From positions 216,914-280,913 of IMG/VR virus record IMGVR_UViG_3300022935_000005: DNA of 64,000 bases, one strand, 5' to 3'. The notes beneath the pieces were generated by a model. That model searched no databases and was not told the origin of the DNA. It saw nothing but the letters and a program-made list of their open reading frames with translations. Within the stretch, counting starts at the first letter, position 1; each line of letters begins with the position of its first letter. Shown piece by piece: positions 1,111 through 63,533 of the stretch. The translations under genes were made by a program, and so were the position numbers.

Positions 1111-1208
1111 CTGGCTGTTTTTCACTATTATATTTTCACATAATGAGACAAGTTCAGAGGTGAAAAGAGTTCGCTTCTAGTAACCGTTAATTAGTCTGAA
1201 AAGACATG

Positions 1209-1230
1209 AGAGGGAACCACGGTTCCCTCT
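1209..1230 (+). terminator. Hairpin between pckA and the zorB-like gene
   Basis: AGAGGGAAC-CACG-GTTCCCTCT perfect 9-bp stem; U-tail weak. Confidence 0.45.
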
Positions 1231-1255
1231 TACCATCTACAAAAAGGGTCTAGAC

Positions 1256-3234: not shown

Positions 3235-3238
3235 ATAC

Positions 3239-3664
3239 ATGAGGAAAGGGATAATTGCCGGTAATTTTGACGTGATCCATCCGGGGTACGTTCGCTTTTT
3301 CAAAGATGCGAAAGAGAACGCATGCGATTGGCTCATAGTCGCTCTTCACGTTGATCCGACAATCGAACGTCCACTTAAGGCAAAGCCGATACTTTCGGCG
3401 GATGAGCGAACAGAGATCTTACTTTCCCTAAAGTACGTAGATGAAGTCTTATATTACAACACTGAGAAAGAGCTTACACAGGTCTTGTCGAGCGTACCAG
3501 ACCATGTAAGAGTGATAGGATCAGATTACCTCGGGAAAGAATTCACTGGTAAGTCTCTCGCAGGTGATATTTATTACCATAAGCGCGACCACAATTGGTC
3601 AACCACGAGGTTCAAGACTGAAATAGCACAGCAATGTATGAGACAGGGTTACATAGACAGATAG
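3239..3664 (+). CDS. Cytidylyltransferase-like (TagD/RfaE family) nucleotidyltransferase
   Basis: AGNFDVIHPGY (HIGH-like), LKYVDEV, GSDY, WSTT. Confidence 0.85.
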   Translation: MRKGIIAGNFDVIHPGYVRFFKDAKENACDWLIVALHVDPTIERPLKAKPILSADERTEILLSLKYVDEVLYYNTEKELTQVLSSVPDHVRVIGSDYLGKEFTGKSLAGDIYYHKRDHNWSTTRFKTEIAQQCMRQGYIDR

Positions 3665-3951
3665 GCCACCAAGTCTTTTTTGTTATTTTAAATCTTCTCG
3701 ATTATCTAACAACTCATACCTTGATCTCGACTGACGGGCAAGAGTTGATGCCTGTCGGTAACGCTGTTATAGAAAATTATGGTCTTATCGGGCTCTTGGT
3801 ATTTAAGCTGTCATTGACATTTTTAGTCATTCTACTGGGTAAGGTATTCAGGTTCAAAGATTCACTGTGGGAACTATTGAACGGCTTCCTGACAGCGGTC
3901 GTTGTTTGGAACAGCACAGGGATATTTCTGTCAATGTTCTTCCCCGTCTAG
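3634..3951 (+). CDS. Small integral membrane protein (DUF5658-like)
   Basis: NLLDYLTT...ELMPV pattern and three hydrophobic segments. Confidence 0.55.
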   Translation: MYETGLHRQIGHQVFFVILNLLDYLTTHTLISTDGQELMPVGNAVIENYGLIGLLVFKLSLTFLVILLGKVFRFKDSLWELLNGFLTAVVVWNSTGIFLSMFFPV

Positions 3952-5846
3952 GCGGTGGGATCTTCGTACCATTCTTCCATGAATGATTCACCGGTGATTT
4001 CTTCTAGTCTTCTGATCATTTTTTCCATATTGATTTTTACAACTTTACCAGTTTTGACATTTCTAGAAAAATACTGCCACTCACCTTCTTCGTTGTGAGG
4101 GGATATTTGCGTAACATTGCCTGCTTCGTCTCTTACAAAAACTTCAGCAGAAGAAGCAACGTCTTTGGAGTAAATGTGAGCGTAATTGGTTACAGTGCTA
4201 GGATCACTTGTTGCTTGCATCGCAATTCTGCCATCAATCTCTAAATCTCCTAAAAACCTAGAATTACCTTTTACATCTAGTTCAGCACTTGGGTTGCTAG
4301 TTCCAATTCCCACACTTCCGGAAGTGTTAAAATGAATAGTACTCGACACATCACTTCCTAGTGTTGCTTCAGACACAATCGATGCATCACCACCTAAAGT
4401 GCCATGATATCCTCCGACATAATCTTTTATTCCATCTTGACCTGTGGTGTCAATGTGGTCTCCCATTTTCCACCAGTGGACTAAATCACTGTATGCAGAG
4501 TACTCTTCCATGTTCTTTACATTTCCGTCGTTGTAAAGTTCTTGAACTTCTGTGGGAGTAAGTACGCGATTAAACCTACACACATCTGCTAATTTACCAG
4601 CGAGCGCATTACTTGTTGAGTCGTTAACATCGATGCCGCCTAAAGTTGTTGGTATTGAGGTTTGAGGCATCCCGGAATAGTTCGTTGAGGTTTGTGTTGT
4701 GAAATATATTAGGTTGGGTACGTTCAAATCATTATTGATTGATGATCCACCGCCTCCCTCATAAATACTTCCATTCCCAACTGGATGTGAGTTCTTATAA
4801 ACTCTTATTCCGGACGTCGCTTTGCTTCCATCGTAAGTAACACAAAGATGAAACCAAGTATTTTCTGCGTGGAAAAATTTACTATTTGCAGAGGTTTGGG
4901 CTACCGCTATCCTGTTTGATGTACTAAAGGTTCCAACACCGTTTTGATCTGGGTCTGCATATAAAATAATTTGTAGCAGACCGCTTCCAACCCCAATATA
5001 AATTTCGCCATCATTAGGTGAAGTAGACCTTTTTGTATATAACCCACCTGCATGCTTCCCGTTTGTTCCATCGTAGTCTATCTCTTCTAGATTGACCCAC
5101 ATAGAAATAGTGAATGCTTTGTCAGTGCCCTGGCCAGAACTAAATGAAGTGTCTGTTGTAGCATCAGAAATAGTTACTTCATCAAACGGAGAGAGTCCGT
5201 CGAGCTGAATTGCCTTCTGGTTTACTAATGAGTCTGATTTTATTTGCACAGACCCAGTGACGCTAAAACTTCCTGTCACAAATGTATTACCTTGAAGTTT
5301 TGAAGTACCTTCTACATGAAGCACGTCAGTTGGCGTTGACGTTCCAATTCCGACTTTATCGTTCGCACCATCAACATAAAGCATATGTGTGTTGTTGTCT
5401 GACTCAACTCGAAAGTTAACTAGCGAGTCTGATGTTTGGTTAACGACAACCTCTGGAACAGCACCATCCAATCGCAATCCTTCACGGGAAGTTCCTGCGT
5501 CACTTGCTTTAAAAACGATATGTTTGTTTGAGTATAGGTTTTCAATTAGGATATTATTTGATGAATTGATCCCAATCAGAGCTCGATCACTATCATCTTC
5601 GGTAAATCTAATGAACGTTTCGTCACTCTGTCCTTCAACTCCGTTTATAGTGAGTTTCTCTGACGGAGTCTCGGTACCGATGCCTACATTCCCATGATCG
5701 TCGATGATAGCTCTTTCCGAACCGTTCGTTGAGAATCTAATTTTATTTTCATTAGGGTTCTGTTCAACTTCTACCTTCGTGTCTCCATCTTTATCTTCTA
5801 GGGTGTCCTCAGTGATGGCACCGGCTCTAATTTTGGTAATTGGCAT
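3948..5846 (-). CDS. Tail-fibre/virion-like protein with LamG (concanavalin-like) domain
   Basis: Repeated GNVGIGTxTP beta-helix units, FTISMWV...WFHLCVTYDG...LADVCRFNRVLT LamG signature; AGGAGG RBS and ATATTTA box upstream. Confidence 0.7.
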   Translation of the reverse strand: MPITKIRAGAITEDTLEDKDGDTKVEVEQNPNENKIRFSTNGSERAIIDDHGNVGIGTETPSEKLTINGVEGQSDETFIRFTEDDSDRALIGINSSNNILIENLYSNKHIVFKASDAGTSREGLRLDGAVPEVVVNQTSDSLVNFRVESDNNTHMLYVDGANDKVGIGTSTPTDVLHVEGTSKLQGNTFVTGSFSVTGSVQIKSDSLVNQKAIQLDGLSPFDEVTISDATTDTSFSSGQGTDKAFTISMWVNLEEIDYDGTNGKHAGGLYTKRSTSPNDGEIYIGVGSGLLQIILYADPDQNGVGTFSTSNRIAVAQTSANSKFFHAENTWFHLCVTYDGSKATSGIRVYKNSHPVGNGSIYEGGGGSSINNDLNVPNLIYFTTQTSTNYSGMPQTSIPTTLGGIDVNDSTSNALAGKLADVCRFNRVLTPTEVQELYNDGNVKNMEEYSAYSDLVHWWKMGDHIDTTGQDGIKDYVGGYHGTLGGDASIVSEATLGSDVSSTIHFNTSGSVGIGTSNPSAELDVKGNSRFLGDLEIDGRIAMQATSDPSTVTNYAHIYSKDVASSAEVFVRDEAGNVTQISPHNEEGEWQYFSRNVKTGKVVKINMEKMIRRLEEITGESFMEEWYEDPTA

Positions 5847-5952: not shown

Positions 5953-7890
5953 ATGGGAGCACTTGGCGGCCACATGGCTCATCTTCATGAGTCATTAGAA
6001 CTTACGTTTGATGAACTTTCGACTATTCTTGATAGTGTAGCAAACGCTGACATATCGGCGACTGAAAAGGTTGATGGTCAAAACCTGTTTTTGACAGTGA
6101 AGAGTGACGGGTCTATCAACACTGCCCGTAATGGCGGGGACCTAAAGAAGGGTGGAATGACTCCTAATGAGTTTGCTGCTAAGTGGAAGGGTCACCCCGC
6201 GGAGAGCGCTTTCACTAAGGGGTTCGAGGCAATCTCTCAAGCTATTAAATCCCTTGACCAGTCGACTTTAAATGACTTGTTTGCCAATGGGACGAGATAC
6301 GTTAATATGGAAGTCATGTACCCAGGCAATCCGAACATGATCGTGTATGATGCCGGCAACGTGGTACTTCATAACTTCCAAACGTTCGATTCTTCTGGCG
6401 CTCCCGTCGATGATCCAGACGCCCGCACCGCATTTCAACAGCTTGTTTCTGCTGTCGATGAAGCTGAGTCTGATGTCGATGGTGAAGCTTGGCTAGTGAA
6501 GGGTCCTGTAATCGCCCAGCTGCAGAGGCTAGCAGATGGGACAGCGCTCAAGGAAGTTCAAGCAGCGATCCAGAGGATTGCTTCGCCAGTGGGGATGTCT
6601 GCGACACTTGGGGATCTCGCAGAGTTGCGCTTGAGAGCCACGGCAATTCAGGCCGGTATACCAGAAAATAAGGTCGACCAGATGATGGACGCTGCGTTCG
6701 AGCGTGAGGGCGCTGCGTCTGTTAGGGACATCAAGAAAGGTTTGACGAAAGAACAGCAGGGCGTTGTTTCGAAGTTGGCAACTAAAGCCAACGCCAGGAA
6801 AGCGGTTGGTGCAGCCATGAAGCCGCTTGAATTAGCGATTACTGACTTTGCGATTGAAGTCCTCAGAGGGATGGAGAGCTACTTTGTTTCTGATACTGAT
6901 AAGGAATTGGCCCGACAACGGAATGAGCTTTCTAGGGCCATTGACTACCTCGAGGGACTAGCTACATCAGGTGACGAGGAGGTCGGTAAGATGGTCGACC
7001 GCCAGCTTGAGAAGTTGACTGACATCGAGAATCAGATTAATAGTACGATGGAGGGTATCGTCTTTGAATATCCACCTGGATCGGGAGAACTTAAGAAGCT
7101 TACCGGATCATTTGCGATGATGAATCAATTGGTTGGGAGAGCAAAGCGAGCAGGTATGCCTTCTGGTAGTGCGGTCGAGGAATCGTATGGTCGAGCTGCG
7201 TTCTCTTCTAGTGAATCAGCTTCGATTTACGACTTGATCTTGAATGAGCAAGCCTTCGTCGATAAGGGAAAGAGGGTCGGGTTGATTCCTGTCTCTGGAA
7301 AGCCGTATCACGCAGGACATCATTATCTTGTAGAGCAGGCAGCTGCCGATAATGACGAAGTTGTGCTTTTCGTTTCTACCTCTGATAGGAAAAGGAAAGG
7401 TGAAATGTCTATCTTGGGTGTAGACATGCTTCAAGTCTGGAAGCAAGAGCTAGAGAAGATTATGCCTACAAATGTCCGGGTAGAGTACGGAGGATCTCCT
7501 GTTCGTAAAGTCTATGACACCATTGGGAAAGCGTGTGAAGCGGGTGACGCTGAGGAAACCTACGTCATCTATTCAGATCCCACAGACACGATGCAGAACT
7601 ACCCGCAAGTGAATAGAGACAAATACATGCAGCCTATGTGTCGAATGGGACAAGTGGTTTTTGCGGCAGAAGAAGACCCGACAAGGTTTGAGAGAGGGGA
7701 GGGTTCACCAGATGTAAGCGGTACGAAAATGCGCGCCGCCATGGCAGCTGGAGATTTTGAAACCTTTGCAGCTGGTATGCCCGCAGGGGTTAACTCAAGA
7801 AATGTCTGGAGCATCTTGACTCACGATGAACCTTCTCCCACGTCGGAATCCAAGAAGTACTCTCTGGTATCAGCCCTTTACGGAAGTTAG
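5953..7890 (+). CDS. Two-domain protein: ligase-like KxDG N-terminal domain plus C-terminal HIGH-type nucleotidyltransferase
   Basis: MGALGGHMAH start, TEKVDGQN, C-terminal GKPYHAGH and VSGTKMR. Confidence 0.6.
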   Translation: MGALGGHMAHLHESLELTFDELSTILDSVANADISATEKVDGQNLFLTVKSDGSINTARNGGDLKKGGMTPNEFAAKWKGHPAESAFTKGFEAISQAIKSLDQSTLNDLFANGTRYVNMEVMYPGNPNMIVYDAGNVVLHNFQTFDSSGAPVDDPDARTAFQQLVSAVDEAESDVDGEAWLVKGPVIAQLQRLADGTALKEVQAAIQRIASPVGMSATLGDLAELRLRATAIQAGIPENKVDQMMDAAFEREGAASVRDIKKGLTKEQQGVVSKLATKANARKAVGAAMKPLELAITDFAIEVLRGMESYFVSDTDKELARQRNELSRAIDYLEGLATSGDEEVGKMVDRQLEKLTDIENQINSTMEGIVFEYPPGSGELKKLTGSFAMMNQLVGRAKRAGMPSGSAVEESYGRAAFSSSESASIYDLILNEQAFVDKGKRVGLIPVSGKPYHAGHHYLVEQAAADNDEVVLFVSTSDRKRKGEMSILGVDMLQVWKQELEKIMPTNVRVEYGGSPVRKVYDTIGKACEAGDAEETYVIYSDPTDTMQNYPQVNRDKYMQPMCRMGQVVFAAEEDPTRFERGEGSPDVSGTKMRAAMAAGDFETFAAGMPAGVNSRNVWSILTHDEPSPTSESKKYSLVSALYGS

Positions 7891-7954
7891 TGAACAAGCA
7901 CGGTTATTTTCTTATACTTGTTATGGCTTAAGCCGCAAGCAAAAGGAGAAAAAC

Positions 7955-8962
7955 TTGTTCCGTAAAGCCCTATCTTTTGACGACGTCTTACTCGTACCGA
8001 AGTATTCTGGCGTTCACTCACGTTCTGATATCGATCTCACTCTTGAGATTATGACAGACGAATCCATGAAGCTGCCGGTATTTGCAGCTCCAATGGATAC
8101 CATCATGAATGCAGAGATGGCTAGAGTTTTATTCGAAGCTGGAGCTCGCGGTGTTATGCATAGATACTGCAGTATCGAAGAGCAGGTCGCAGTTGTCAAG
8201 GAGGTAACTGATCAGGCTGAAATATTCGCTGCAGTAGGTATAACAGGAGATTATTATGATAGAGCAGGAGCCCTTATCGATGCAGGAGCTGTTGGGATTT
8301 GTGTGGACGTGGCTCATGGACATCACCGATCTGCAATTGATGCTATTCGAAACCTTAGTCGCACTTACAGAAATACTCATATAATGGCAGGCAACGTTGC
8401 CACCCTACGGGCTTTTGATGATTTAGCGGAAGCTGGAGCCAACTCTATCCGTGTTGGTGTCGGAGGTGGTTCCATCTGTAGTACCAGGATTATGACCGGT
8501 CACGGTGTACCGACATTACAGAGTGTTCTGGACTGCGCGTTGTCAGAGTCGGATGCTTTGCTTATCGCTGATGGTGGTATTAAGAACACTGGAGATATGG
8601 TGAAAGCGTTGGCTGCAGGTGCTGATGCAGTAATGGTTGGTAGAATGCTGGCTGGAACCACCGAGACCCCTGGACAGGTTATTGTTAACCCTGGAGAGAG
8701 GCCCACGAAAGTGTACAGGGGTATGGCAAGCCCGGAGGCTCAAGTTGCTTGGAGAGGTCGATATTCATCAAATGAAGGTGTAAGTAGGACTGTACCACTA
8801 AGAGGTTCTGCAAGAGCTGTGCTGTTTGAGATTGATAAGGGAATTCGTAGTGGTATATCTTATTCTGGAGCATTTTCTGTGAGAGAGCTACAGGCAAGGG
8901 CTGAGTTTATTGAGCAGTCTGCTGCTGGAGCTCGCGAGAGTTCGACGCATATTGACAACTAG
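7955..8962 (+). CDS. IMP dehydrogenase / GMP reductase family protein without CBS domains
   Basis: LSFDDVLLVP, APMDT, DVAHGH, GNVAT, VGVGGGSICSTR, ADGGI, YRGMAS; TTG start at 7955 after AGGAG. Confidence 0.9.
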   Translation: MFRKALSFDDVLLVPKYSGVHSRSDIDLTLEIMTDESMKLPVFAAPMDTIMNAEMARVLFEAGARGVMHRYCSIEEQVAVVKEVTDQAEIFAAVGITGDYYDRAGALIDAGAVGICVDVAHGHHRSAIDAIRNLSRTYRNTHIMAGNVATLRAFDDLAEAGANSIRVGVGGGSICSTRIMTGHGVPTLQSVLDCALSESDALLIADGGIKNTGDMVKALAAGADAVMVGRMLAGTTETPGQVIVNPGERPTKVYRGMASPEAQVAWRGRYSSNEGVSRTVPLRGSARAVLFEIDKGIRSGISYSGAFSVRELQARAEFIEQSAAGARESSTHIDN

Positions 8963-8986
8963 GGGATAATAAACCTCGTTAACTCA

Positions 8987-8993
8987 ATATTTA
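8987..8993 (+). promoter_or_regulatory. Putative late-promoter box ATATTTA
   Basis: Same heptamer at 5873-5879 (- strand), 21253, 30435, 40245 and 60848, each shortly before an ORF or ORF cluster. Confidence 0.5.
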
Positions 8994-9025
8994 GATTTGA
9001 ACACCAACGTGGAGAAGATTGAGAT

Positions 9026-9478
9026 ATGGCGAGCACAATCAGTACAGCTACTCTACAAGTCCAGATACTTGAAGACATTGAGCTTAATGGAGTCAAGAGG
9101 GGGTCTAGGGCGTACCACACATTTGCTAATATTAAGCAAATCGATGAGAGAATTCTAACGGTACCTACATATGAGGTAGATATTCTGCTTCTTAGCTCTT
9201 CAGCTGCTGCTGGTACTTATGCTACCAATAGCTTTAAGTACGCGAGGCTTACCAATCTAGATGATACTAATTATGTTTCGATCACCCTGCTGTCTGGTTC
9301 GCAGGGCTCGAAGTCAGTCCAGAAATTGCTTCCTAAGACGAGTATGATGATAACAGACCTTGCTCTATCAGGGTCATCAGCGGGTGTTTCTTTCGGGTCA
9401 TTCAACGATATCACAGCTGTAAAGGCTAGCGCTAATTCTGCTAATGTTGATTTGTCGCTTTTTGTGGCTACAACTTAG
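9026..9478 (+). CDS. Hypothetical protein, probably structural (beta-rich)
   Basis: S/T/A-rich; KYARLTNLDDTNYV; follows an ATATTTA box. Confidence 0.45.
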   Translation: MASTISTATLQVQILEDIELNGVKRGSRAYHTFANIKQIDERILTVPTYEVDILLLSSSAAAGTYATNSFKYARLTNLDDTNYVSITLLSGSQGSKSVQKLLPKTSMMITDLALSGSSAGVSFGSFNDITAVKASANSANVDLSLFVATT

Positions 9479-15994: not shown

Positions 15995-17245
15995 GTGAGC
16001 GGAAAAAACAATAAGGAAGAAGAGACTTTATTTGTAAAGGGTAACTATGTTGCCGTAATGAATGGTAAGGTCGACGCTAGCGGTCTTGTATCAACCTCTG
16101 TGACAGTATGTACCATTTTGCACGTAGGCTGTGATGACGTGTTTGTGCAGTCTACATCCAGCCAGTTTTCTAATCCAGTAAGGTATATCGTTTCTAAACA
16201 AGCGTGCGTTCCTCTCTCCATAGATCCCGGGAATGTCGTTGGTTGTGTGCCTGCCCAGCCCTCAATCGGAGATATGGTTTTGTTTCATGATAAGCTGACG
16301 TGGTCGAGTAAAGAGCTTGAACTTATAGTTGGTACTGTATATGAAATATCTTTTATGAAGGGACGTCCGTCAACCGCGACTGTAATGAGAGGCACTGACA
16401 TGATCGAGCTACCGTACGCCAGTTTGCTGGTTTTACAGAAGGCACATTCGGTAGTGTAATTGTTCGACCAAACGCTTATAGTATAGCCATGAGCAAAGAA
16501 AGCAGCAAACCAACAAGTAAGAAAGCATCGGCACGGGGCGCACGTAAGTCTCTCGTCGCGGAATATAAGGCGAAAGCAAGGGGCAAAAAAACTTCTAGCG
16601 TTTCCTCAAAGAAAAGTGCCGATAAGAGTAAGCCAGTTCGACGAACGCCCACGAAGATTACATACAACCCTATCACGGAAATGGAAGTGGCCGGAGAAGT
16701 TTATCGCACCGGTGACATCGCACACTTCGTTTTAGAGGGCCGGATGGAGTCCAAGAAGCCTCACACCGGTGAGATCAAGGAATGTTATCCCAACGATCGG
16801 ATGGAGCCGAGCGTGGCAGTTTGGGACCAGACCGACGGCAAATACAGAACAATCAGAGCCAGATTGGTTGGATGGACAGCCACAGAAGCAAAGAAGAAAT
16901 GGCAGGAGTTCCTCGGTGACAACCCGGAAAAAGATTACTACTAATAAAGAGAGTGATGTGATTCAATCGTCACGCCGTAAGCGTGCCTCTAGAATCGACC
17001 CCCTCTCAGAGCACTGGTTCCACCCCAGAACCCCTTTCGCTCCCGGAGACATAGTTGCCATCAAGTGGGCAGATGATGCGCTTTCTCACCTCATGAATGA
17101 GGGTCCTCGGAGAACAGGAGTTGTCCTGACCGTGCTTGACGATACCACACCTGAGGGTGTTGAAGTCATGTGGGACTCGGGGGATATTGATTGGGATTAC
17201 GCCGATGACCTCCGACACGTTGAGGAGAGTCCACGACATGAGTAA
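15995..17245 (+). CDS. Three hypothetical ORFs (15995-16459, 16489-16944, about 16958-17245) with SH3/Tudor-like segments
   Basis: PSIGDMVLF, YRTGDIAHF and FAPGDIVAIKW motifs. Confidence 0.5.
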
Positions 17246-18068
17246 AGAGAGAAAACACATACTTCACATTCACGTTCCCAAGACAGGCGGGACTTGGTTC
17301 AACAGAGTCATGCACGAGCACCTGGGTACCGCATTTACTAGTGCCGATCACAACGCTGTCGAGTGGGCCGTCGAGGGCACGATGAAGGTCCCGTTCTGGA
17401 TCACAAGCGGAGCTGAGCACGTCGCTATAACGCTGCAAGGCATCGATGCCGAGGGTAACCGCGTCCCAAACCTCCTCCGCCCGGAGATTTACACGCGAGT
17501 CGGCATCTGCCGGAATCCGTTCGAGCTGCTTGTGAGTCACTGGAGCCACGACCACCCCGCTGACCGCGAGCGTGCCGCTCGCTGGGGCGCGCTGCCAGCC
17601 GGCCCGGTCGGTTGGGACTGCACCAACGCGGTTCACGGCATCTCAAGTTTTGACGGCTTCATCAAACGCCTGACAGATCCTGAGTTTCCCTGGGCTCACG
17701 CAACGTTGCAGCAGTCGCTGCACTACCAGTTACTGACGACAAAACGCCCACCCCGGGTCACTGTTGACTATGTGCTGAGGAACGAGCGGTTGACGGAGGC
17801 AACGCGAGAGCTCTTGGGCTTTCTGGGCATTGAACCCAATGAGACCACGCTCGCGAGCGATCGCGCCAGCAACAGCAGCCGCCACCGAGACTACCGGAGC
17901 TACTATACCGACGAGTTGCGCGAGCTTGTGGAGACCCACTATGCCCGAGACCTGGACACGCTTGGGTACGATTTTGACGGGTCAACGATCGACGCGGCGT
18001 GGTTTGCCATGGACCCTGCTGAAGAGCTGCCCGAGACCGCCATTGACACATATGTGTTAAAGGTGTAA
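17238..18068 (+). CDS. Sulfotransferase family 2 protein
   Basis: HIHVPKTGGTW (5'-PSB), RNPFELLVSHW (3'-PB), DYVLRNERL, YRSYYTDEL...DLDTLGYDF. Confidence 0.85.
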   Translation: MSKERKHILHIHVPKTGGTWFNRVMHEHLGTAFTSADHNAVEWAVEGTMKVPFWITSGAEHVAITLQGIDAEGNRVPNLLRPEIYTRVGICRNPFELLVSHWSHDHPADRERAARWGALPAGPVGWDCTNAVHGISSFDGFIKRLTDPEFPWAHATLQQSLHYQLLTTKRPPRVTVDYVLRNERLTEATRELLGFLGIEPNETTLASDRASNSSRHRDYRSYYTDELRELVETHYARDLDTLGYDFDGSTIDAAWFAMDPAEELPETAIDTYVLKV

Positions 18069-38875: not shown

Positions 38876-39814
38876 ATGTCATCAGTCAACCTTGGATATG
38901 CGTGTATCAACATGACGCTCCAGAAATCTCGCAAAGTTCAGTGCAATCGTGGCATGATCAAACGCACGTTTGCAGCAAAAGGCATCTCGTATGCTAGCGA
39001 GCTAGCTCTGAAGAATGTTACAGATCTTCGTGAAGTCATAAAGTGGAACAACGAAAACGGTGTCAGCGTTTATCGTATGACATCGTGCTTGTTTCCGTGG
39101 TTCTCAGAATATGACATGTTCGATCTTCCAGACATTGATAAGATCGCAGAGGTTATGGCAGACGCTGGTAAGATCGCTATGGATGCCGGACAGCGGCTAA
39201 GCTTCCATCCTGGCCCCTTCAACTGTCTGGCTTCACCAAGCGAAAGTGTAGTTCTTAAGACCATCAAAGAGCTTAATGATCATGCCGCGCAGATGGACCT
39301 CATGGGTCTACCAGCCTCCCCCATGGCTAAGATTAATATCCATGTTGGTGGAGCATATGGTGAGCATGACAAAGCACTGGAGAGGTTCTGTAAGAACTTC
39401 GAACGTCTTGGTGAAACTACTCGAGCTCGGCTGACTGTGGAAAATGACGACAAGCCCGCCTTATATTCTACCAAGATGCTGGTTGAAGGTGTCTCGAATC
39501 GAGTTGGGGCTCCAGTAGTCTTCGACTCTCATCACCATGAGCTAGGCCCGCAGGATTTGGATTACCACGATGCGTTCCATCTTGCTCGTGAAACTTGGGA
39601 AAAGCGCAGTGCCAAGCAGCAGTGTCACCATTCAAACTCTCGTAAGAACTACGAAGACCCTACCGCGAACGCAGTAGCGCACTCTGACTGGTACTATACT
39701 CCTTTCGAGAGCTTTGGTAAGCAGGTAGATGTTGTTCTAGAATGTAAGAAGAAAGAAGTTGCTCTATTCAAATACAGGAATGATTTCGTCGACAGTCTTC
39801 AAAAGGTGGCATAA
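38876..39814 (+). CDS. uvsE: UV DNA damage endonuclease
   Basis: LGYACIN, YRMTS.LFP, RLSFHPGPF.CLASP, INIHVGG, LTVENDDK, VFDSHHH, HSD. Confidence 0.92.
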   Translation: MSSVNLGYACINMTLQKSRKVQCNRGMIKRTFAAKGISYASELALKNVTDLREVIKWNNENGVSVYRMTSCLFPWFSEYDMFDLPDIDKIAEVMADAGKIAMDAGQRLSFHPGPFNCLASPSESVVLKTIKELNDHAAQMDLMGLPASPMAKINIHVGGAYGEHDKALERFCKNFERLGETTRARLTVENDDKPALYSTKMLVEGVSNRVGAPVVFDSHHHELGPQDLDYHDAFHLARETWEKRSAKQQCHHSNSRKNYEDPTANAVAHSDWYYTPFESFGKQVDVVLECKKKEVALFKYRNDFVDSLQKVA

Positions 39815-52331: not shown

Positions 52332-54440
52332 ATGACCAACAGAAGACTAGCAGCTTCATTTTTCTTTCTTGCTGCTATCGGGTGCTCAGAAGATCAAGTC
52401 TCTCAGATGACCGTCGACTCTGGTGTAAGGACTATCACTCAAGATGACAGCAGTGCTGCAGATGTAATGATAGTCACAGTTCAAGACGCCTCTATAGATA
52501 TGTTCATTGATCCATGTCTCGACATCCAGAACACCGATGATATGTACTGTGAGTGTCACCCCAGATGCTGTCAAAATCAAACATGGTACTGCCCTCCTAG
52601 AGGTACTGAAGTTTTGGCAAAAGATGCTGTCTTAGACATCTGCGATACTGACTATGTACCGTGTGATAGAAACATTGATGAATCATGTCCTCCGGCAGAA
52701 ATTATCTACGAAAGTTCTTGTAACCATATGTTTGACTGTCCACCGGGCATAGACGAAGACTTTACAGTTTTCTATGATTGTGAGGTGGATGGTAACCCGG
52801 GCACTCAGAGGGTGCGTTGTGACAAGGGAAGGTTAGACTATGGACAGTGCGTCGTTTGTGTCTTGGCGGACGAGATCTGTGACGGCCAAGATAATGACTG
52901 CGATGGCGAAATAGACGAACACCAATTGAATGAATGTGGTCAATGTGGATTGTTACCCCAAGATGCTTGTGATGGGCTCGATAACGACTGCGATGGTCTT
53001 GTTGATGAAGATCTGGTTCAAGCATGTGTCACTACATGTGAGCGTGGTGTAGAGGTTTGTGAAAACGGAGCCTGGGTGGGTTGTACAGCAAGACAGCCAT
53101 CCGAAGAAATCTGCGACGGCTTCGATAATGACTGCGACGGTTTGATTGATGAAGAGCTTAATTGCGGATGCCCACCTGAGATGGTCGGCGCGTTGCTACC
53201 CTGTATGGAACCACCACTAACTTGTGGGATGGGATTCAAGACGTGCGAGTGTGAAGATGAAGACTGCTTGACAACTCGAATGTCTGACTGCTTCGCTTTG
53301 TGCGCTTGGTTACCGGCAGAGATAGTCCAGCATGATGAGCCAGACACTTGTGACAGATACGCAGGAATGCCTGTTAATCCAGAAGTTTGTAATAACTTCG
53401 ACGAAGACTGTGACGGTTTAATCGATGAGAGACTAAACAAGCCTTGCTATTCTGGTCCTCAAGATACTATAGGGGTAGGTGTGTGTCGAGGTGGTAGTCA
53501 AGTCTGCGAACAAGGTCGCTGGTACGGAGAAACAACAGCCGGCAGTTTTGTTCACGATTTTTGTGCAGGTGAGATCGTACCCAGCAGAGAGATTTGCGAC
53601 GGTAGTGATAATGACTGCGATGGTGTTACCGACTTTGGTCGAGAGATTCCAGACACAGACATTCTTTTCATTCTTGATTGGTCTGGATCTATGGCATACC
53701 AGATCAACGCTGTAAAGATGGCGATGAATAGATTTGCAAACCATTTCGCTGCAGAGGGTAAGTTAAAATGGGGATTAATAACCGGACCTCGGATTTTTCC
53801 AAGAGAAGGTCAAGATCCTTCACAGGCTAAACAATACCTGAGGTTAGAAACTGACATAACATCATTCTCAGATTTTATCGCTGCATTCTCTGCAGCTGGT
53901 GCTTTTGAGACTGGAGCAACCCATGAAATGTTAATTGACGCGCTGCTGCTTTCTGTCGCGACTATTTCATCTAACATGACTTATGACCTGTCAACCGCAC
54001 AGTGGTTCAATGGTTTCTCTGACGCCGGATCGATTCCGAGTCTACAAGACTTTCGAATAAACTGGCGACATAACGCTGACAGGGTTATCGTAGTGTTTAC
54101 AGACGAGGAGGATCAGTCTTTCCTCGTACCGAAAGTGACTAGCGAACAAGCTATAGCAGCCCTCGAGGGATCACCAGATACTACACTTTATGTGTTCACA
54201 CAAAGATACTTTTTTTCGAGGTGGGACGATTATGTAGACCCGACAGGTGGAAGACTGTTCCCATTATCTTCTAACTCTGAGCAGATGTATGATGATCTCA
54301 TGTCTATACTCGATGAGATCTGCCTTAACGCAGGCTCTTCTGTACAGATGGAAGAAGCTTCGTATAATGGTAATATGTCAAGCCAGCTATACAATCCAGT
54401 GATTTCAAGATATAATTTTTCTGGTGGCTATTGCTACTAA
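52332..54440 (+). CDS. Cys-rich lipoprotein with repeated E.CDG.DNDCDG..DE (putative metal-binding/MopE-like) motifs and C-terminal VWA domain
   Basis: Lipobox AAIGC; five CD/NxxDxDCDG units; DILFILDWSGSM, VIVVFTDEEDQS. Confidence 0.85.
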   Translation: MTNRRLAASFFFLAAIGCSEDQVSQMTVDSGVRTITQDDSSAADVMIVTVQDASIDMFIDPCLDIQNTDDMYCECHPRCCQNQTWYCPPRGTEVLAKDAVLDICDTDYVPCDRNIDESCPPAEIIYESSCNHMFDCPPGIDEDFTVFYDCEVDGNPGTQRVRCDKGRLDYGQCVVCVLADEICDGQDNDCDGEIDEHQLNECGQCGLLPQDACDGLDNDCDGLVDEDLVQACVTTCERGVEVCENGAWVGCTARQPSEEICDGFDNDCDGLIDEELNCGCPPEMVGALLPCMEPPLTCGMGFKTCECEDEDCLTTRMSDCFALCAWLPAEIVQHDEPDTCDRYAGMPVNPEVCNNFDEDCDGLIDERLNKPCYSGPQDTIGVGVCRGGSQVCEQGRWYGETTAGSFVHDFCAGEIVPSREICDGSDNDCDGVTDFGREIPDTDILFILDWSGSMAYQINAVKMAMNRFANHFAAEGKLKWGLITGPRIFPREGQDPSQAKQYLRLETDITSFSDFIAAFSAAGAFETGATHEMLIDALLLSVATISSNMTYDLSTAQWFNGFSDAGSIPSLQDFRINWRHNADRVIVVFTDEEDQSFLVPKVTSEQAIAALEGSPDTTLYVFTQRYFFSRWDDYVDPTGGRLFPLSSNSEQMYDDLMSILDEICLNAGSSVQMEEASYNGNMSSQLYNPVISRYNFSGGYCY

Positions 54441-57443: not shown

Positions 57444-58179
57444 AGTAATACTCCCGGGAGTGGAATGGAAACAGTATCATTCACGATCAAGTTCGGAGAC
57501 ACTTCCGACCCCCACCAGCTTGCACGGCAGATCGCTGAGGAGCTAGACCTTCGAAGTTGGAGGGTCAAGGAATCTGACTCATCCTCTGAGGATGAGGGTA
57601 TCGCTGCCACAAAATACATTATCCAAGGATGGAGCACCGAATGGTGAAAGAAGAGGTAAGGGACATCGTTATCGCTACCACCGTTAACGCTATCACCGTT
57701 GGCGCAGGTATCTTACTCGGGTACACCATGTATCCTATTATCGTCGAGTTTATGAAGTGATACATCTCATTGGTGACATCGTCCGGTTTGTGGGGTCTAG
57801 TGCTGATGAGATGTACATGATTATCGACAGAGCATATCCCGGCGATGATGAGGAGTGGGAGTGGGAGTGGGTCTTGATGAACTTTCACGGTGGACATATC
57901 ATTTATTGTGCTGATGAAGAGATCACCCTCGTCTCAGAGGGTGAAGAGTGAAAGTGGGTGACTTGGTAAGAGTTCAGTATCCGGATGATGATACTTGGTA
58001 TTCGGGTTTTCTAGTCGAGGTTGCTCACGACGACGATCCGATGTCAACCTATCAGATGTATTGTGTTGAGCGTGAAGCTCTTCATATTCTAAGTCCGGGC
58101 CGCGATCTAATCGAGGTGATTAGTGAAGAATAGATGCCACCAGCAGTGTAAAACAGCATACTTAAGATTAGAATAGAAT

Positions 58180-60698: not shown

Positions 60699-60814
60699 AG
60701 GAGTGAGGCGGTATTACGCAGGGTTCTACTGAGACAATAAACGACCCGGGCCGAGGAATAAGAGTCTAACAAAGGAATACTCGGTCACTTGCAGGTGAGA
60801 ACCCTGCCACTCCT
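60699..60814 (+). ncRNA. Structured RNA motif A, copy 1
   Basis: AGGAGTG/CACTCCT, GCAGGGTTCT/AGAACCCTGC and GGCCGAG/CTCGGTC stems; TTGAAC-N17-TACAAT promoter directly upstream and T-run downstream; second copy at 63189. Confidence 0.75.
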
Positions 60815-60877
60815 TCTTTTTTGGTATATCTATATGCTGCGCTCGATATATTTATCTTTACGATCTGGAGGACAATA

Positions 60878-61156
60878 ATGAAAATCACAAAAAGACAGCT
60901 TAGAGGGATTATCAGAGAAGCTATGCAGCCCGGCGGAATGGCTGTACGTTTGCAAACAAATAAGCTGGTGAAAGCGGGTCTTGCAGATTTTTCAGGACCT
61001 ATCGAGTACAAGAGTCCACAAAATTTTGTCATTAGAGACGTAGAGAAATCCAAAGTGCCTGAATTCATTAGCTGGATCGAGGAAATCGATTCAATGATGC
61101 GCCATGAAGAACCAGGATCCGCGCCTCACTTGGTAGACTTGCATTACGGAGTGTAG
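60878..61156 (+). CDS. MKITK-leader protein, dispersed member
   Basis: MKITKRQLRGIIREA; ATATTTA at 60848 and GGAGG RBS. Confidence 0.75.
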   Translation: MKITKRQLRGIIREAMQPGGMAVRLQTNKLVKAGLADFSGPIEYKSPQNFVIRDVEKSKVPEFISWIEEIDSMMRHEEPGSAPHLVDLHYGV

Positions 61157-61157
61157 A

Positions 61158-61382
61158 ATGAAAATCACAAAGCGACAACTAAGAAGAATTATTAGAGAAG
61201 CTACTGTATCCCCTAAGTTACCCAATCCAGATCCTCACTATGAAGATGGATGGAATGACGCTATTGTGTACGGTGAACCTAGACAAACTCCCACTCATCC
61301 ACCCAAAGCCGTTGATGCGTATTGGGACGGTTATCAAGATGGTGAAGATCATGCACGAAGGTCCGAAGAGCCTCTTCATTAA
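61158..61382 (+). CDS. MKITK-leader protein, dispersed member
   Basis: MKITKRQLRRIIREA; body Y.DGW.D...Y.DGY.DG. Confidence 0.75.
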   Translation: MKITKRQLRRIIREATVSPKLPNPDPHYEDGWNDAIVYGEPRQTPTHPPKAVDAYWDGYQDGEDHARRSEEPLH

Positions 61383-61444
61383 ACAAACCTCTCCAAAAAC
61401 ACTCCTCTCTTGTAAATACATCTACTCCCATAATACAATTCTAT

Positions 61445-61513
61445 AAATGAAGTTACCCCGATCGTAGCGGGTGGGACTGGAAACAGTCAGTTAGGTGGTC
61501 TGGTTGCCTAACA
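61445..61513 (+). ncRNA. Structured RNA motif B, copy 1
   Basis: ACCCCG/CGGGT, GACTG-GAAA-CAGTC and GTTAGG/CCTAAC hairpins plus T-run; TTGTAA-N18-TACAAT upstream. Confidence 0.7.
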
Positions 61514-61597
61514 TTTTTAATTTAGTTGCTTTTTATGAGCAAAACGCCCACTCGGAGTAGGCACTATGACACATAAAAGTAACTTGCGGAGAAGAGA

Positions 61598-62182
61598 ATG
61601 ACTGACGAAATCAAAGAACTCAAAAAGCAAGTAGAAGAACTCAAAAAAGAGAATACAGAGCTACAACGAGAGTTATCAGTTCATAATTTTCTTGATACTG
61701 GCGTTCCACAGGAGCGACTTGATTATCAGCGAGAGTTAAAAAAAGAACTAAACGAATTTCGTTATCTCTACGGAAGTGTTCTTTCTCGCATAAACAAGTT
61801 GGAAGACGACACAAGAGCAGCGATAGAGTTTGCCGACCTCGCAGAAGACGATAGGGGAACTGAAATGATCTTGAAGTTCTGCGACGACATTACAAAGTTG
61901 GTTGGAGAATAAAGAATGAAAAGCAACCACTCTTATAATGCTGGTTATCACAGAGGACTAAACACAGAATACCACGATGTTCCTATTGAAGAACTCTTTG
62001 CTAAATGGATTGCCGATGTTCGCAGACCAGCATCAGCAGAAGCATTTGACCCTGTTGCTTTTGAGAAAGGTTATAACGACGGCAAAGACGACTATCTATG
62101 CGGTGGCAACACACCAGAAAGAGTTGAAGAACAGATAGAGTGGTTGAAGAAACTTGCGGAGAAAGAAAATGAACAACATTGA
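61598..62182 (+). CDS. Two hypothetical ORFs (61598-61912 coiled coil; 61916-62182)
   Basis: A-rich ORFs with GGAG RBSs. Confidence 0.55.
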
Positions 62183-62747
62183 GGACATTAAAAACAAATG
62201 GGAGAACACAAGGCTCCTAGAAGAACTACCAGAAGACGAGCAATATTCTATGAGTCAATTGTTAGAAAATGAAGCAAGACATATTCTATCTACTTACCAA
62301 GATGTAAATGAAAGTCAATTAGCATACATTTGTTTTCCTTTAATTCGCAGGATATTCCAATCATCAGGTTTTTTTGAAGAAGGTGATTGCCCACTCACTT
62401 TCACATACGAAACAAGTGTTCTTCCCGCATTTACCTACTTCAAGCCAGACGAAGAAGAAGCAAGTGTTGCAATAACTCAGGTTTATGATTTTGAATCCTC
62501 GCCAAACAAAGAAGTGGTTGAGGAAATTTGCTCCAATAGGTATTATGCTCTGGATGCGGAAGTTGGACTAACAGCAGAACTCGCTGAAAGATTCAGAAAC
62601 GAACTTAACGAGAAACACAAAGGAAAACATCTTATTTTTGGAGATCCAATTATGATGAGAGAAGAAGACGGCGAAAGGATTTATTCTTATCGTTGTGCGG
62701 TTTTACCGGGAGGTTCAAGATTACACGAAGGAGGATATAAAGAATGA
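62169..62747 (+). CDS. Protein resembling the N-terminal part of a T4 gp23-type major capsid protein (truncated paralog)
   Basis: KWENTRLLEEL...MSQLLENEARHIL...FPLIRRIF. Confidence 0.6.
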   Translation: MNNIEDIKNKWENTRLLEELPEDEQYSMSQLLENEARHILSTYQDVNESQLAYICFPLIRRIFQSSGFFEEGDCPLTFTYETSVLPAFTYFKPDEEEASVAITQVYDFESSPNKEVVEEICSNRYYALDAEVGLTAELAERFRNELNEKHKGKHLIFGDPIMMREEDGERIYSYRCAVLPGGSRLHEGGYKE

Positions 62748-63180
62748 ACAACATTGAGATTCTATATCAAGAATGCAAAGTGTGTGGAAAAACATTCAAA
62801 CTTCCAACTCGTAAAGAACTGGAAAAATCAATTTTATTCAAGGCTGCCGAGGCTCTCGGAATTGATATGGGAAATGGTTATACAGGCGGGAATAGTTTAT
62901 TGGCGATGTTGAACTGTTCTGTTGAGTGTGCGAGAAAACTGGAGAGCGAAGAGTGAAAGTCGGTGATCTGGTAAAAGCAAAGCACAAATACTCTAAAAAC
63001 GAAGTAGGGATTGGGATAGTACTCAAAGTAGAAGAAAACTTCTACAAAACCTATAATGATTACTTTGAAGACCGATTGACTATTCACTGGGCACACGGGG
63101 AGACAACTTTGGAACCAGATAGTTATGTTGAGAAAATAAGTGGAACAAAATGTCAACATTTGCTCCCAGATGGAGTATAA
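62744..63180 (+). CDS. Zn-finger ORF (62744-62956) and KVGDLV barrel ORF (62953-63180)
   Basis: CKVC...CSVEC; MKVGDLVKAKHK. Confidence 0.6.
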
Positions 63181-63188
63181 TTGTAACA

Positions 63189-63308
63189 AATAGAGTGAGG
63201 CGGTATTACGCAGGGTTCTACTGAGATGATATACGACCCGGACCAAGGAATAAGAGTCTTAAAAGGGAATACTTGGTCGCTTGCAGGTAAAAATCCTGCC
63301 ACTCTATT
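63189..63308 (+). ncRNA. Structured RNA motif A, copy 2
   Basis: AATAGAGTG/CACTCTATT and GACCAAG/CTTGGTC stems, compensatory relative to copy 1; TATAAT at 63176-63181. Confidence 0.75.
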
Positions 63309-63311
63309 ATA

Positions 63312-63422
63312 AAATGAAGTTACCCCGATTGTAAGGATGAAGCGGGAGAGGGATAAACTCCATGATTGCTAATCTGCGGGTGGGACTGGAAACAGTCAGT
63401 TAGGTGGTCTGGTTGCCTAACA
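63312..63422 (+). ncRNA. Structured RNA motif B, copy 2, with a 42-nt insertion
   Basis: Nearly identical to copy 1 except insert 63334-63375 in the first hairpin loop. Confidence 0.7.
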
Positions 63423-63443
63423 CCTTTTTAGGGAGAGCGAAGA

Positions 63444-63533
63444 ATGAAAGTCGGTGATCTGGTAAAAGCAAATCACAAAATCGGCGCGGCTAATATCAAA
63501 AAACGCTACAAGATGACGAGCGGTCAAGCTTAA
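63444..63533 (+). pseudogene. Truncated copy of the 62953 gene start
   Basis: 41-bp near-identity 62941-62981 vs 63432-63472 (one mismatch at the start codon), then divergence and a stop after 29 aa. Confidence 0.6.

What the first reader, a model, noticed from the sequence alone, without database searches (positions are those of the whole stretch)
62169..62747. Truncated major-capsid-protein (gp23-like) paralog outside any structural module
Seen: KWENTRLLEEL...MSQLLENEARHIL...FPLIRRIF, then an unrelated-looking C-terminus, about 190 aa in total, among small A-rich ORFs between the ncRNA pairs. From recalled knowledge, this matches the N-terminal pattern of T4 gp23-type capsid proteins (KW..TGLLEGL...MA.LLENQA...FPLVRR.F). 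Established: some defence systems (CapRel, Lit) are triggered by capsid proteins. Inference: a decoy or assembly modulator, or a relic.
Basis: partly seen in the sequence, partly recalled or inferred. Interest (0 to 1): 0.65.

Follow-up and report, generated by a model that had tools for sequence, protein, structure and literature searches.

The report
Mobile mini capsid-protein (gp23) paralog
A large marine T4-like phage carries an intact, conserved and horizontally mobile 192-residue copy of its major capsid protein that has lost the two domains needed to build capsid units, so it probably acts by imitating unassembled capsid protein rather than by building shell.

Summary
The ORF at 62169-62747 (+) is real (192 aa, P0001), and its likeness to gp23-type major capsid proteins (MCPs) is far beyond chance. 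It is not a simple truncation. The whole protein is collinear with the genome's own 637-aa MCP, with two internal deletions: the middle insertion (~MCP 108-356) and the A-domain (~438-590). What remains is the N-terminal scaffold-facing region plus a minimal HK97 P-domain. Structure searches agree: T4 gp24 is the best PDB match, and a Gp23 cluster in the ESM Atlas gives TM 0.66. It belongs to an unannotated family of 165-226-aa proteins, at least 30 clusters at 50% identity, all from uncultured phage-like contigs. Every copy seen is intact, with dN/dS about 0.2-0.3. The gene moves as a single-gene cassette: 97% nucleotide identity between two phages whose MCPs are 43% identical. The relic reading is refuted. 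Function is inferred only. The favoured reading is a mimic of unassembled gp23 that engages the scaffold core; co-folding with the scaffold C-terminus gave weak support (0.59, best control 0.00). An anti-defence decoy role remains a serious rival.

The parts
62169..62747 (+). mini-gp23 coding sequence (192 aa plus stop), P0001
   Evidence: ORF. Homology to gp23. AF2 model pLDDT 83.9, pTM 0.82. Purifying selection.
62169..62357 (+). aa 1-63: three helices equivalent to the gp23 N-terminal (propeptide-like, scaffold-facing) region and the FPxIRRxF N-arm motif
   Evidence: hhalign: P0001 3-86 vs MCP 22-107, 99%, E 7e-19. Helices H4-14, H22-42, H48-63. Most conserved columns of the family: K10, W11, G15, L17, N34, R60, R61.
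62397..62534 (+). aa 77-122: four short strands plus a short helix, equivalent to the MCP strands just before the spine helix (MCP ~357-411)
   Evidence: hhalign: P0001 81-148 vs MCP 357-437, 96%, E 2.4e-9. Strands E79-107.
62535..62618 (+). aa 123-150: spine-helix equivalent (LDAEV..LT..L.E motif)
   Evidence: hhalign on this segment alone: 95.7%, E 8.6e-9, vs MCP 412-437. The same second stretch recurs in about 40 independent MCP representatives. Helix H127-150.
62619..62708 (+). aa 151-180: beta-hairpin joined directly to the spine helix, probably equivalent to the MCP C-terminal P-domain hairpin (MCP ~591-618). The A-domain that lies between them in gp23 is absent.
   Evidence: Sequence match is weak but collinear and top-ranked: E 0.001-0.01. 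T4 gp24 structural alignment spans chain 13-382 of 390. Atlas Gp23 representative aligned over query 1-176.
62158..62183 (+). 26-nt RBS and start-codon block, repeated at 62733-62758 in front of the next gene (85% identical). The two copies flank the cassette.
   Evidence: Repeat D10. The segment shared with the distant phage G001 is exactly 62168-62748.
62733..62758 (+). second copy of the 26-nt RBS/start block (start of the 70-aa Cys-motif ORF)
61445..61519 (+). conserved stem-loop element (repeat D3) with a terminator-like hairpin at 61490-61512. It opens the five-gene unit that holds mini-gp23.
   Evidence: The same element lies directly upstream of mini-gp23 in G001 and occurs in L004, L005, L008-L011.
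63376..63427 (+). second copy of the D3 stem-loop element (96% identical); closes the unit
61598..63180 (+). five tightly packed co-oriented ORFs forming the unit: 104 aa coiled-coil, 88 aa, mini-gp23, 70 aa with CxxC...CxxxC, 84 aa
   Evidence: ORFs. No family hits for the neighbours. Order and content shuffle among close relatives.

Best explanation
SHOWN. P0001 is a functional gene for a 'mini-gp23'. It is an old, fast-evolving paralog of the T4-type major capsid protein in which the middle insertion (~250 aa) and the A-domain (~150 aa) have been removed. What remains is (i) the N-terminal helical region and N-arm motif and (ii) a minimal HK97 P-domain: strands, spine helix and C-terminal hairpin. 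The gene is a sporadic, single-gene mobile cassette in hyperplastic regions of uncultured marine T4-like phages.

INFERRED. Without an A-domain it should not be able to form hexamers or pentamers, so it is not a shell subunit. Nearly every residue conserved across the family is one that is also conserved in true MCPs. It therefore most likely works by mimicry of unassembled gp23, binding a partner that recognises those conserved N-terminal and P-domain motifs.

My favoured partner is the conserved C-terminal region of the scaffolding protein (gp22 equivalent). That would recruit the protein to the prohead core, or make it compete with gp23 there, as an accessory assembly-associated factor. I put the architecture and gene status at about 0.9 and the scaffold-binding mechanism at about 0.35.
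For: Homology and collinearity.

Unbiased search: PF07068 MCPs are hit with two collinear stretches each.

Selection and intactness: dN/dS about 0.2-0.3 where dS is informative, and no broken copies.

Conserved columns coincide with MCP-invariant residues.

Mobility: 95% aa and 97.4% nt identity between G000 and G001, whose MCPs are 43% identical. The shared DNA ends at the gene boundaries.

Scaffold link: the gp23 N-terminal region is thought to contact the scaffold core (PMC9546572). The scaffold C-terminal ~120 aa is the main part conserved between G000 and G001, besides a weaker N-terminal stretch of ~50 aa.

Co-fold of scaffold aa 395-505 with P0001: ipSAE 0.60, 0.59 and 0.57, best of 3 controls 0.00, runs agree in at least 68% of contacts, partner pLDDT at least 79. 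The tool's verdict is 'weak support'. The mark was reached by 58 of 80 solved complexes and 2 of 110 mismatches, but scores of 0.60 or under came from only 7 of those 80 and from both mismatches that passed.
Against: No direct evidence of binding, virion presence or expression timing. The co-fold is only weak support, and the tool rates such a pass as more often wrong than right unless the prior was good.

A [LIV]xE site at the position matching the MCP's invariant LxE motif (the putative maturation site, inferred from T4 gp21 specificity) is kept in only about 4-5 of 31 family members and not in P0001. That argues against gp23-like processing in the prohead.

The gene sits among accessory and conflict-type genes, not head genes. 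That pattern is more typical of host-interaction genes.

It is absent from a 273-kb relative that is 82% complete, so it is not needed for assembly.

The MCP model used for domain boundaries was poor, pLDDT 42.9.
Confidence: 0.4

Rival explanations
1. Anti-defence decoy. The mini-gp23 imitates the conserved surfaces of nascent gp23 and occupies host immune sensors that recognise major capsid proteins (Lit/Gol, CapRel, Avs7/Dsr1-type sensors) without activating them.
For: It is small, fast-evolving, sporadic and horizontally mobile, and it sits in hyperplastic or accessory regions. Neighbours in different phages include an ART-PolyVal domain protein, an MzaB-like ATPase with a patatin, Dam, NUDIX/NAD salvage genes and glycosyltransferases. 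Mini branches are several-fold longer than MCP branches. It works in phages whose MCPs are only 43% identical, so its target must recognise MCP features conserved across phages. MCPs are established triggers of several defence systems (PMC9712102; bioRxiv 10.64898/2026.01.04.697583).
Against: No sensor is known for these uncultured hosts. There is no PADLOC or anti-defence family hit. A mimic that keeps trigger surfaces could activate a sensor rather than block it. Expression timing is unknown: the T4 late-promoter motif is uninformative here and read data could not be obtained.
Confidence: 0.25
2. Glycosylation-linked factor. The mini-gp23 serves phage glycosyltransferases as an MCP-like adaptor or acceptor.
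For: In 5 of 13 sampled contexts (the window included; 4 of the other 8 are contigs under 2 kb or have no Pfam-annotated neighbour) the gene is embedded in GT2/GT4/epimerase clusters, twice with overlapping start or stop codons: L019, L021, L023, L025 and the P0156 contig. L127 has an epimerase and a cytidylyltransferase upstream. G000 has GT clusters at 37-41 kb and 51-54 kb.
Against: The GT-linked contexts belong to one sub-clade with shared synteny (PhoH upstream in L021 and L025), so they are not independent. P0001 itself and its near relatives are not next to GTs. No interaction was tested.
Confidence: 0.08
3. Chaperonin-directed factor. The gp23-like N-terminus delivers the protein to GroEL and tunes or commandeers chaperonin capacity for capsid protein folding.
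For: The N-terminus of T4 gp23 targets fusion proteins to GroEL (PMC3012670, citing Snyder and Tarkowski 2005). The N-terminal region is among the best conserved parts of the family, with the spine-helix segment scoring about the same. GroEL is conserved across hosts, which fits the transfer between distant phages.
Against: This rests entirely on analogy with T4, whose N-terminal sequence is divergent; the A1 profile finds no T4 gp23/gp24 chain in the PDB by sequence. It does not explain why the P-domain is retained.
Confidence: 0.08
4. Inter-phage weapon or bait. The mini-gp23 co-assembles with, or senses, the capsid or scaffold proteins of a competing T4-like phage. It would act either as a dominant-negative assembly poison or as the sensing subunit of a phage-borne defence-like operon.
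For: In L017 the homolog lies 13 nt after an MzaB-like GHKL ATPase and 3 nt before a patatin-like phospholipase. The retained motifs are those shared by all MCPs of these clades.
Against: This is a single context. A poison aimed at motifs shared by all these MCPs would also hit the carrier phage's own assembly.
Confidence: 0.07
5. Relic. A decaying fragment of a duplicated capsid gene with no function.
For: It is much shorter than gp23 and escapes Pfam's Gp23 model.
Against: All homologs are intact. dN/dS is about 0.2-0.3. The family spans at least 30 clusters at 50% identity that share the same deletion junctions, including the conserved ELNEK..GK..FY.P helix-to-hairpin join. The fold is confident and compact. 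Near-identical copies sit in distant phages.
Confidence: 0.02

Closest known systems
T4-type major capsid protein gp23 (Pfam PF07068, HK97 fold)
   Same: Homologous along its whole length: the N-terminal KW..TGLL..L / LLENQA helices, the FPxIRRxF N-arm motif, the strands before the spine helix, the LDAEVE..LT spine helix, and probably the C-terminal Y.P...TRY hairpin.
   Different: 192 aa against 440-670 aa. It lacks the insertion domain and the whole A-domain. It scores below Pfam's threshold. It is not in the head module. The LxE motif at the position of the MCP's putative maturation site is not conserved. It evolves several-fold faster. It is sporadic and mobile.
T4 vertex protein gp24 (PDB 1YUE)
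   Different: gp24 is a complete HK97 subunit with A and I domains that forms pentamers. The mini protein has neither domain. G000 shows no separate gp24-like PF07068 gene.
~335-aa compact gp23-like proteins (P0205, P0229) found in the same search
   Same: They share the N-terminal region and lack the large insertion. In P0205 the strands and spine helix follow the N-arm directly, as in the mini protein.
   Different: They keep a reduced A-domain and the full C-terminus (PF07068 hits). P0205 groups with the MCPs in the tree. They are structural intermediates in architecture, not shown to be evolutionary ones.
T4 internal proteins and Alt (cargo recruited to the scaffold core by a capsid-targeting sequence, encoded in variable loci)
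   Same: Works-like analogy only: an accessory, variable, mobile gene whose product may carry a scaffold-binding N-terminal element (weak co-fold support). One relative is translationally coupled to an ART-PolyVal domain gene, and T4 Alt is a head-packaged ADP-ribosyltransferase (PMC9546572 lists gpAlt in the core).
   Different: No sequence relation was tested or seen. T4's targeting sequence is a ~10-residue cleaved peptide (my recollection, not checked here), whereas this is a ~60-residue gp23-like domain without a conserved cleavage site.
PeSL-flanked cassettes of T4-like hyperplastic regions (PMC2839356, PMC4122927)
   Same: Small ORFs bracketed by repeated stem-loop elements. Gene content and order shuffle among close relatives, with junctions at gene boundaries and at the repeat.
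   Different: A promoter within the repeat was not demonstrated. The elements occur only twice each in G000. No sequence relation to published PeSLs was tested.

Membership tests
Gp23 major capsid protein family (PF07068) | Scores above the Pfam gathering threshold for PF07068 | tested here: not met
   No PF07068 hit for P0001 or for any of 13 close relatives, even at E up to 1-10. 4 of 32 distant relatives hit phrog_138 'major head protein' (best E 4.4e-6) and 2 hit phrog_20655.
Gp23 major capsid protein family (PF07068) | Demonstrable homology to gp23-type MCPs | tested here: met
   hhalign 99%, E 7e-19 (N-terminal block) and 96%, E 2.4e-9 (strands plus spine helix). PF07068 MCPs are recovered at library-wide E about 1e-9.
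Gp23 major capsid protein family (PF07068) | Complete HK97 fold including the A-domain that forms the capsomer centre | tested here: not met
   The spine helix (H127-150) runs straight into the terminal hairpin (E153-180), with no counterpart of MCP ~438-590. Structural matches cover only part of each capsid chain.
Gp23 major capsid protein family (PF07068) | T4-type insertion domain between the N-arm and the P-domain strands | tested here: not met
   MCP ~108-356 has no counterpart. In the low-confidence MCP model this region (~178-347) is the only moderately confident, separately folded part.
Gp23 major capsid protein family (PF07068) | Encoded in the head module next to the scaffold and protease genes | tested here: not met
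   The head module is at G000 ~104-113 kb. P0001 is at 279.1-279.7 kb among small ORFs.
Gp23 major capsid protein family (PF07068) | Conserved propeptide cleavage motif (LxE) after the N-terminal helices | tested here: not met
   L59 is nearly invariant (at least 90%) and E61 invariant in 20 MCPs. A [LIV]xE at the matching position is present in only about 4-5 of 31 mini proteins and not in P0001. Assigning this as the cleavage site rests on T4 gp21 specificity, recalled, not tested.
T4 gp24-type vertex protein | Full HK97 subunit able to form pentamers (A-domain present) | tested here: not met
   Best PDB structural match is gp24, but the A-domain is absent.
Anti-defence decoy or mimic proteins | Binds and neutralises a host immune sensor of the mimicked molecule | not testable with these tools
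   No sensor is known. PADLOC and NCBIfam give no hit.
PeSL-type mobile regulatory cassette context | Repeated terminator-like stem-loop flanking variable ORFs, with recombination junctions at the repeat | tested here: met
   D3 hairpins at 61490-61512 and 63399-63421. The same element abuts the gene in G001, and gene order shuffles in L004-L011.
PeSL-type mobile regulatory cassette context | Early promoter as part of the repeat | tested here: inconclusive
   Only 9/12 sigma-70-like matches near the repeats. The region holds 10 sites against 5.7 +/- 2.8 expected. The conserved block starts after the candidate promoter at 61410-61439.

The most novel reading that the evidence does not exclude
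A capsid protein has been exapted into a small mobile 'capsid mimic' used in conflicts. It would act either as a decoy that blinds host sensors of the major capsid protein, or as a bait or poison aimed at competing T4-like phages. This would be a widespread, previously unannotated counter-defence or competition class in marine myoviruses, derived from the HK97 fold by deleting its A and insertion domains.
Probability: 0.3. Interest if true: 0.85.

Novelty: new variant of a known kind. Interest (0 to 1): 0.62.

Why it matters
HK97-fold capsid proteins are known as shell subunits (phages, herpesviruses, encapsulins). A conserved, selected and mobile derivative that keeps only the scaffold-facing N-terminus and the P-domain is not in Pfam, PHROGs, NCBIfam or PADLOC, and I found no description in the searched literature.

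If it binds the scaffold core, it offers a natural minimal probe of the poorly understood gp23-scaffold contact that helps set head size. If it is a decoy, it would be a counter-measure to capsid-sensing immunity built from the capsid protein itself.

Either way it defines a sizeable family of 'hypothetical proteins' in marine T4-like phages, and it gives a clear example of single-gene cassette transfer between phages whose core genes are highly diverged.

Tried and rejected
- **Family and sequence searches with no hit.** Pfam, PHROGs, NCBIfam and PADLOC scans of P0001 found no family. A profile search of PDB sequences gave nothing relevant; T4 gp23/gp24 were not reached by sequence. tblastn of P0001 and P0141 against 50,697 GenBank phage records found no match, and P0153 hit only MCP N-termini, so no cultured carrier was found. 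Megablast of the region gave no match.
- **Structure searches.** Foldseek against PDB and BFVD gave only weak hits, although capsid proteins ranked top in PDB. The ESM Atlas feature search gave no usable hit.
- **RNA searches.** Rfam and tRNA scans of the surroundings found nothing.
- **MCP model.** The AF2 model of the true MCP was poor (pLDDT 42.9) and is used only loosely.
- **Complex prediction.** The verdict is 'weak support', not a pass I would lean on.
- **Phylogeny.** The careful run did not finish, so only a quick, poorly resolved tree (115 columns) is cited.
- **Readings rejected.** Chance similarity, relic or pseudogene, gp24-type vertex protein, and simple N-terminal truncation with a foreign C-terminus.
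- **Genetic code and operator limits.** No alternative genetic code was needed.

Full report
**What is there.** The window is the last 64 kb of a 280.9-kb T4-like virus record (G000, CheckV 92% complete). The flagged ORF runs from ATG 62169 to the stop at 62745-62747 on the + strand and encodes 192 aa (P0001). A GGAG lies 8 nt upstream. The ORF overlaps the end of the preceding 88-aa ORF by 14 nt, and its stop overlaps the start of the next ORF. The genome's true major capsid protein (MCP) is a 637-aa PF07068 protein at G000 ~111.2-113.1 kb. It follows a head module of portal, a gp21-like protease, small core proteins and a 505-aa acidic scaffold. That is about 168 kb from P0001.

**Is the likeness to gp23 real?** Yes.
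- BLASTP of P0001 against its own MCP gives two collinear matches: aa 7-63 vs 26-94 (E 7e-6) and aa 97-149 vs 388-438 (E 2e-4).
- A 13-member family profile (A1) against a 20-member MCP profile (A2) gives 97.9% probability, E 6e-13.
- A 32-member profile of the wider family (A3) gives three collinear blocks:
  - P0001 3-86 vs MCP 22-107: 99%, E 7e-19.
  - P0001 81-148 vs MCP 357-437: 96%, E 2.4e-9.
  - P0001 158-178 vs MCP 591-618: weak on its own (E 0.001-0.01) but the top-ranked remaining alignment.
- The A1 profile searched against 1.84 billion representatives recovers PF07068 MCPs at library-wide E about 1e-9. In about 40 of them a second stretch maps the mini protein's long helix onto the same place in the MCP.
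- Pfam's own Gp23 model does not reach P0001, which explains why the family is unannotated.

**Structure.**
- AlphaFold2 with A1 gives a confident compact model, pLDDT 83.9 and pTM 0.82. It has three N-terminal helices, four short strands, a short helix, a 24-residue helix (127-150), and a long hairpin (153-180) joined directly to that helix.
- The ESM Atlas shape search aligns 167 residues (1-176) to a 592-aa Gp23 cluster representative at TM 0.66 by the query, rmsd 4.1 A.
- So P0001 is not an N-terminal fragment with a foreign tail. It is gp23 with the middle insertion (~108-356) and the A-domain (~438-590) excised.
- My AF2 model of the MCP itself was poor, pLDDT 42.9. It only loosely supports these boundaries, through a long helix at 419-446 and a separately folded insert at ~178-347.

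**A family, under selection.**
- The word-index search found 14 relatives of 132-226 aa, nine of them at 45-94% identity over 97-100% of the query.
- The exhaustive search adds about 30-40 further clusters of 165-220 aa that match across the full profile.
- The 32-sequence alignment shows the same architecture throughout, including a conserved helix-to-hairpin join, ELNEK..GK..FY.P.
- Columns conserved in at least 70% of members are K10, W11, T14, G15, L16, L17, L20, L31, L32, E33, N34, A36, P57, R60, R61, F63, P86, D129, E131, E133, E145, P160 and R175. Almost all are residues that are also conserved in the MCPs.
- Pairwise dN/dS is 0.17-0.30 for pairs with dS above 0.1, and no copy is interrupted.
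- A quick, low-resolution tree of the two shared blocks places 31 of 32 mini proteins outside the MCP group (SH-aLRT 89). Their terminal branches are several-fold longer, and P0001 does not group with its own MCP.
- Two ~335-aa gp23-like proteins (P0205, P0229) lack the insertion but keep a reduced A-domain, so they are architectural intermediates.
- The relic reading is therefore refuted. A single old origin is likely but not proven.

**Mobility and context.**
- G000 holds one copy only.
- G001, an 88-kb record, has a copy 95% identical in protein, yet its MCP is only 43% identical to G000's. P0001's N-terminus is closer to G001's MCP (38%, E 1e-10) than to its own (29%).
- The DNA shared by the two phages is window 62168-62748, at 97.4% identity. 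That is exactly the gene. In G001 it is preceded directly by a copy of the stem-loop repeat D3.
- In the window, the repeats D1 (60701-60812 and 63193-63304) and D3 (61467-61518 and 63376-63427, with a terminator-like hairpin) bracket the five-ORF unit 61598-63180.
- The same elements occur in L004, L005 and L008-L011, where gene order and content differ.
- A 26-nt RBS/start block is repeated at both ends of the gene.
- This matches the cassette shuffling described for hyperplastic regions of T4-like phages (PMC2839356, PMC4122927). A promoter inside the repeat was not shown.
- A 273-kb relative of the same MCP clade, 82% complete, has no copy. The gene is therefore sporadic.
- Neighbourhoods of divergent members vary:

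| Context | Neighbours |
|---|---|
| L019, L021, L023, L025, P0156 contig (one sub-clade with partly shared synteny) | GT2/GT4/epimerase clusters |
| L017 | MzaB-like ATPase and a patatin |
| L127 | epimerase upstream, ART-PolyVal gene overlapping downstream |
| L018, L026, L125 | 2OG-Fe(II) oxygenase; NAD-salvage/NUDIX; HSP20/Dam |
| G001 | SbcCD-like nuclease and a TubZ-like tubulin |

**How it most likely works (inference).**
- Lacking the A-domain that forms the capsomer centre, it should not be a shell subunit.
- What selection preserves are the residues it shares with gp23. A mimicry mechanism, binding a partner of unassembled gp23, is therefore the most economical reading.
- The gp23 N-terminal region is thought to face the scaffolding core (PMC9546572) and to direct fusion proteins to GroEL (PMC3012670).
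- The scaffold proteins of G000 and G001 share mainly their C-terminal ~120 aa (34% identity, E 7e-17), plus a weaker N-terminal stretch of ~50 aa (31%, E 5e-4).
- Co-folding that region (aa 395-505) with P0001 scored 0.60, 0.59 and 0.57, with a best control of 0.00. The runs agree in at least 68% of contacts, and partner pLDDT is at least 79.
- The tool calls this weak support. The mark was reached by 58 of 80 solved complexes and 2 of 110 mismatches, but scores of 0.60 or under came from only 7 of the 80 and from both mismatches that passed.
- I therefore favour scaffold-core engagement at about 0.35. The anti-defence decoy reading stands at about 0.25. The gene's mobility, sporadic distribution, fast evolution and conflict-type neighbourhoods fit it at least as well.
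- The poorly conserved LxE motif at the position of the MCP's putative maturation site argues against gp23-like processing.
- Glycosylation-linked, GroEL-directed and inter-phage readings are minor rivals.

**Comparison and novelty.**
- It is a homolog of gp23 and gp24 but fails the tests for membership as a capsid subunit: Pfam threshold, A-domain, insertion domain, head-module location and cleavage site.
- No library searched holds the family. Seven literature searches, four of them aimed at paralogs or decoys, found no description of a minimised gp23 paralog.
- I rate it a new variant of a known kind: the HK97/gp23 fold reduced to N-terminus plus P-domain and exapted as a mobile accessory gene.

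**Limits.**
- All relatives come from metagenomes, and hosts are unknown.
- There are no expression or virion data.

Noticed in passing
window 60701-60812 and 63193-63304 (D1); 61445-61519 and 63376-63427 (D3): Two non-coding repeat families bracket small-gene cassettes. D3 holds a terminator-like hairpin. Each has only two copies in G000, but both recur in related phage contigs (L004, L005, L007-L011), where gene order differs. There is no Rfam hit.
   Followed up: partly
window 60877-61156 and 61158-61382: Two adjacent paralogous small ORFs share an MKITKRQLR.IIREA N-terminus (47-nt repeat, 85% identical). They lie between the first D1 and D3 copies, whereas the second D1-D3 pair is nearly contiguous.
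   Followed up: no
window 62926-63180, 63432-63479 and 57936-57983: A repeated gene-start block encodes MKVGDLVKAKHK-type N-termini (repeat D2). A similar start follows the mini-gp23 in G001. It is another shuffled small-ORF family.
   Followed up: no
window 62744-62956: A 70-aa ORF with CxxC...CxxxC starts with the same MNNIE and the same RBS block as mini-gp23. It stays next to mini-gp23 in most close relatives, but lies upstream of it in L011. It has no family hit.
   Followed up: partly
L017:4258-7865: A 50%-identical mini-gp23 sits 13 nt after an MzaB-like GHKL ATPase (PADLOC E 1.6e-11) and 3 nt before a patatin-like phospholipase. This may be a phage-borne defence-like operon with a capsid-like subunit.
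   Followed up: partly
L019, L021, L023, L025 and the P0156 contig: In one sub-clade the mini-gp23 is embedded in glycosyltransferase and sugar-nucleotide clusters (GT2 of ~640 aa, GT2 of ~241 aa, GT4 of ~300 aa, epimerases, UDP-glucose dehydrogenase), sometimes with overlapping start or stop codons.
   Followed up: partly
L127:3351-4267: An 85%-identical, shorter (165 aa) mini-gp23 overlaps the start of a 140-aa ART-PolyVal (ADP-ribosyltransferase) gene. An epimerase and a cytidylyltransferase lie upstream. DnaJ, a trypsin-like protease and PhoH are nearby.
   Followed up: no
G000 whole record: Only one PF07068 gene, the MCP, was found. There is no separate gp24-type vertex paralog in this 92%-complete T4-like genome.
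   Followed up: partly
L007 (G001): 813-3965 and 7974-9110: The distant T4-like phage that shares the cassette encodes a fused SbcCD-like nuclease/ATPase (1050 aa) and a TubZ-like tubulin (378 aa).
   Followed up: no
window 1-1110, 7826-8962, 17136-18068, 38876-39814, 52332-54440: Auxiliary genes in the window: PEP carboxykinase (partial), IMPDH/GMP-reductase-like, a sulfotransferase, UV endonuclease UvdE, and a 702-aa protein with MopE metal-binding repeats plus a weak VWA match.
   Followed up: no
P0205 (337 aa) and P0229 (335 aa): Compact gp23-like proteins without the insertion domain but with a reduced A-domain. P0205 carries an N-terminal Cys-rich extension. Whether they are shell proteins of small-capsid phages or a further paralog class is unknown.
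   Followed up: partly
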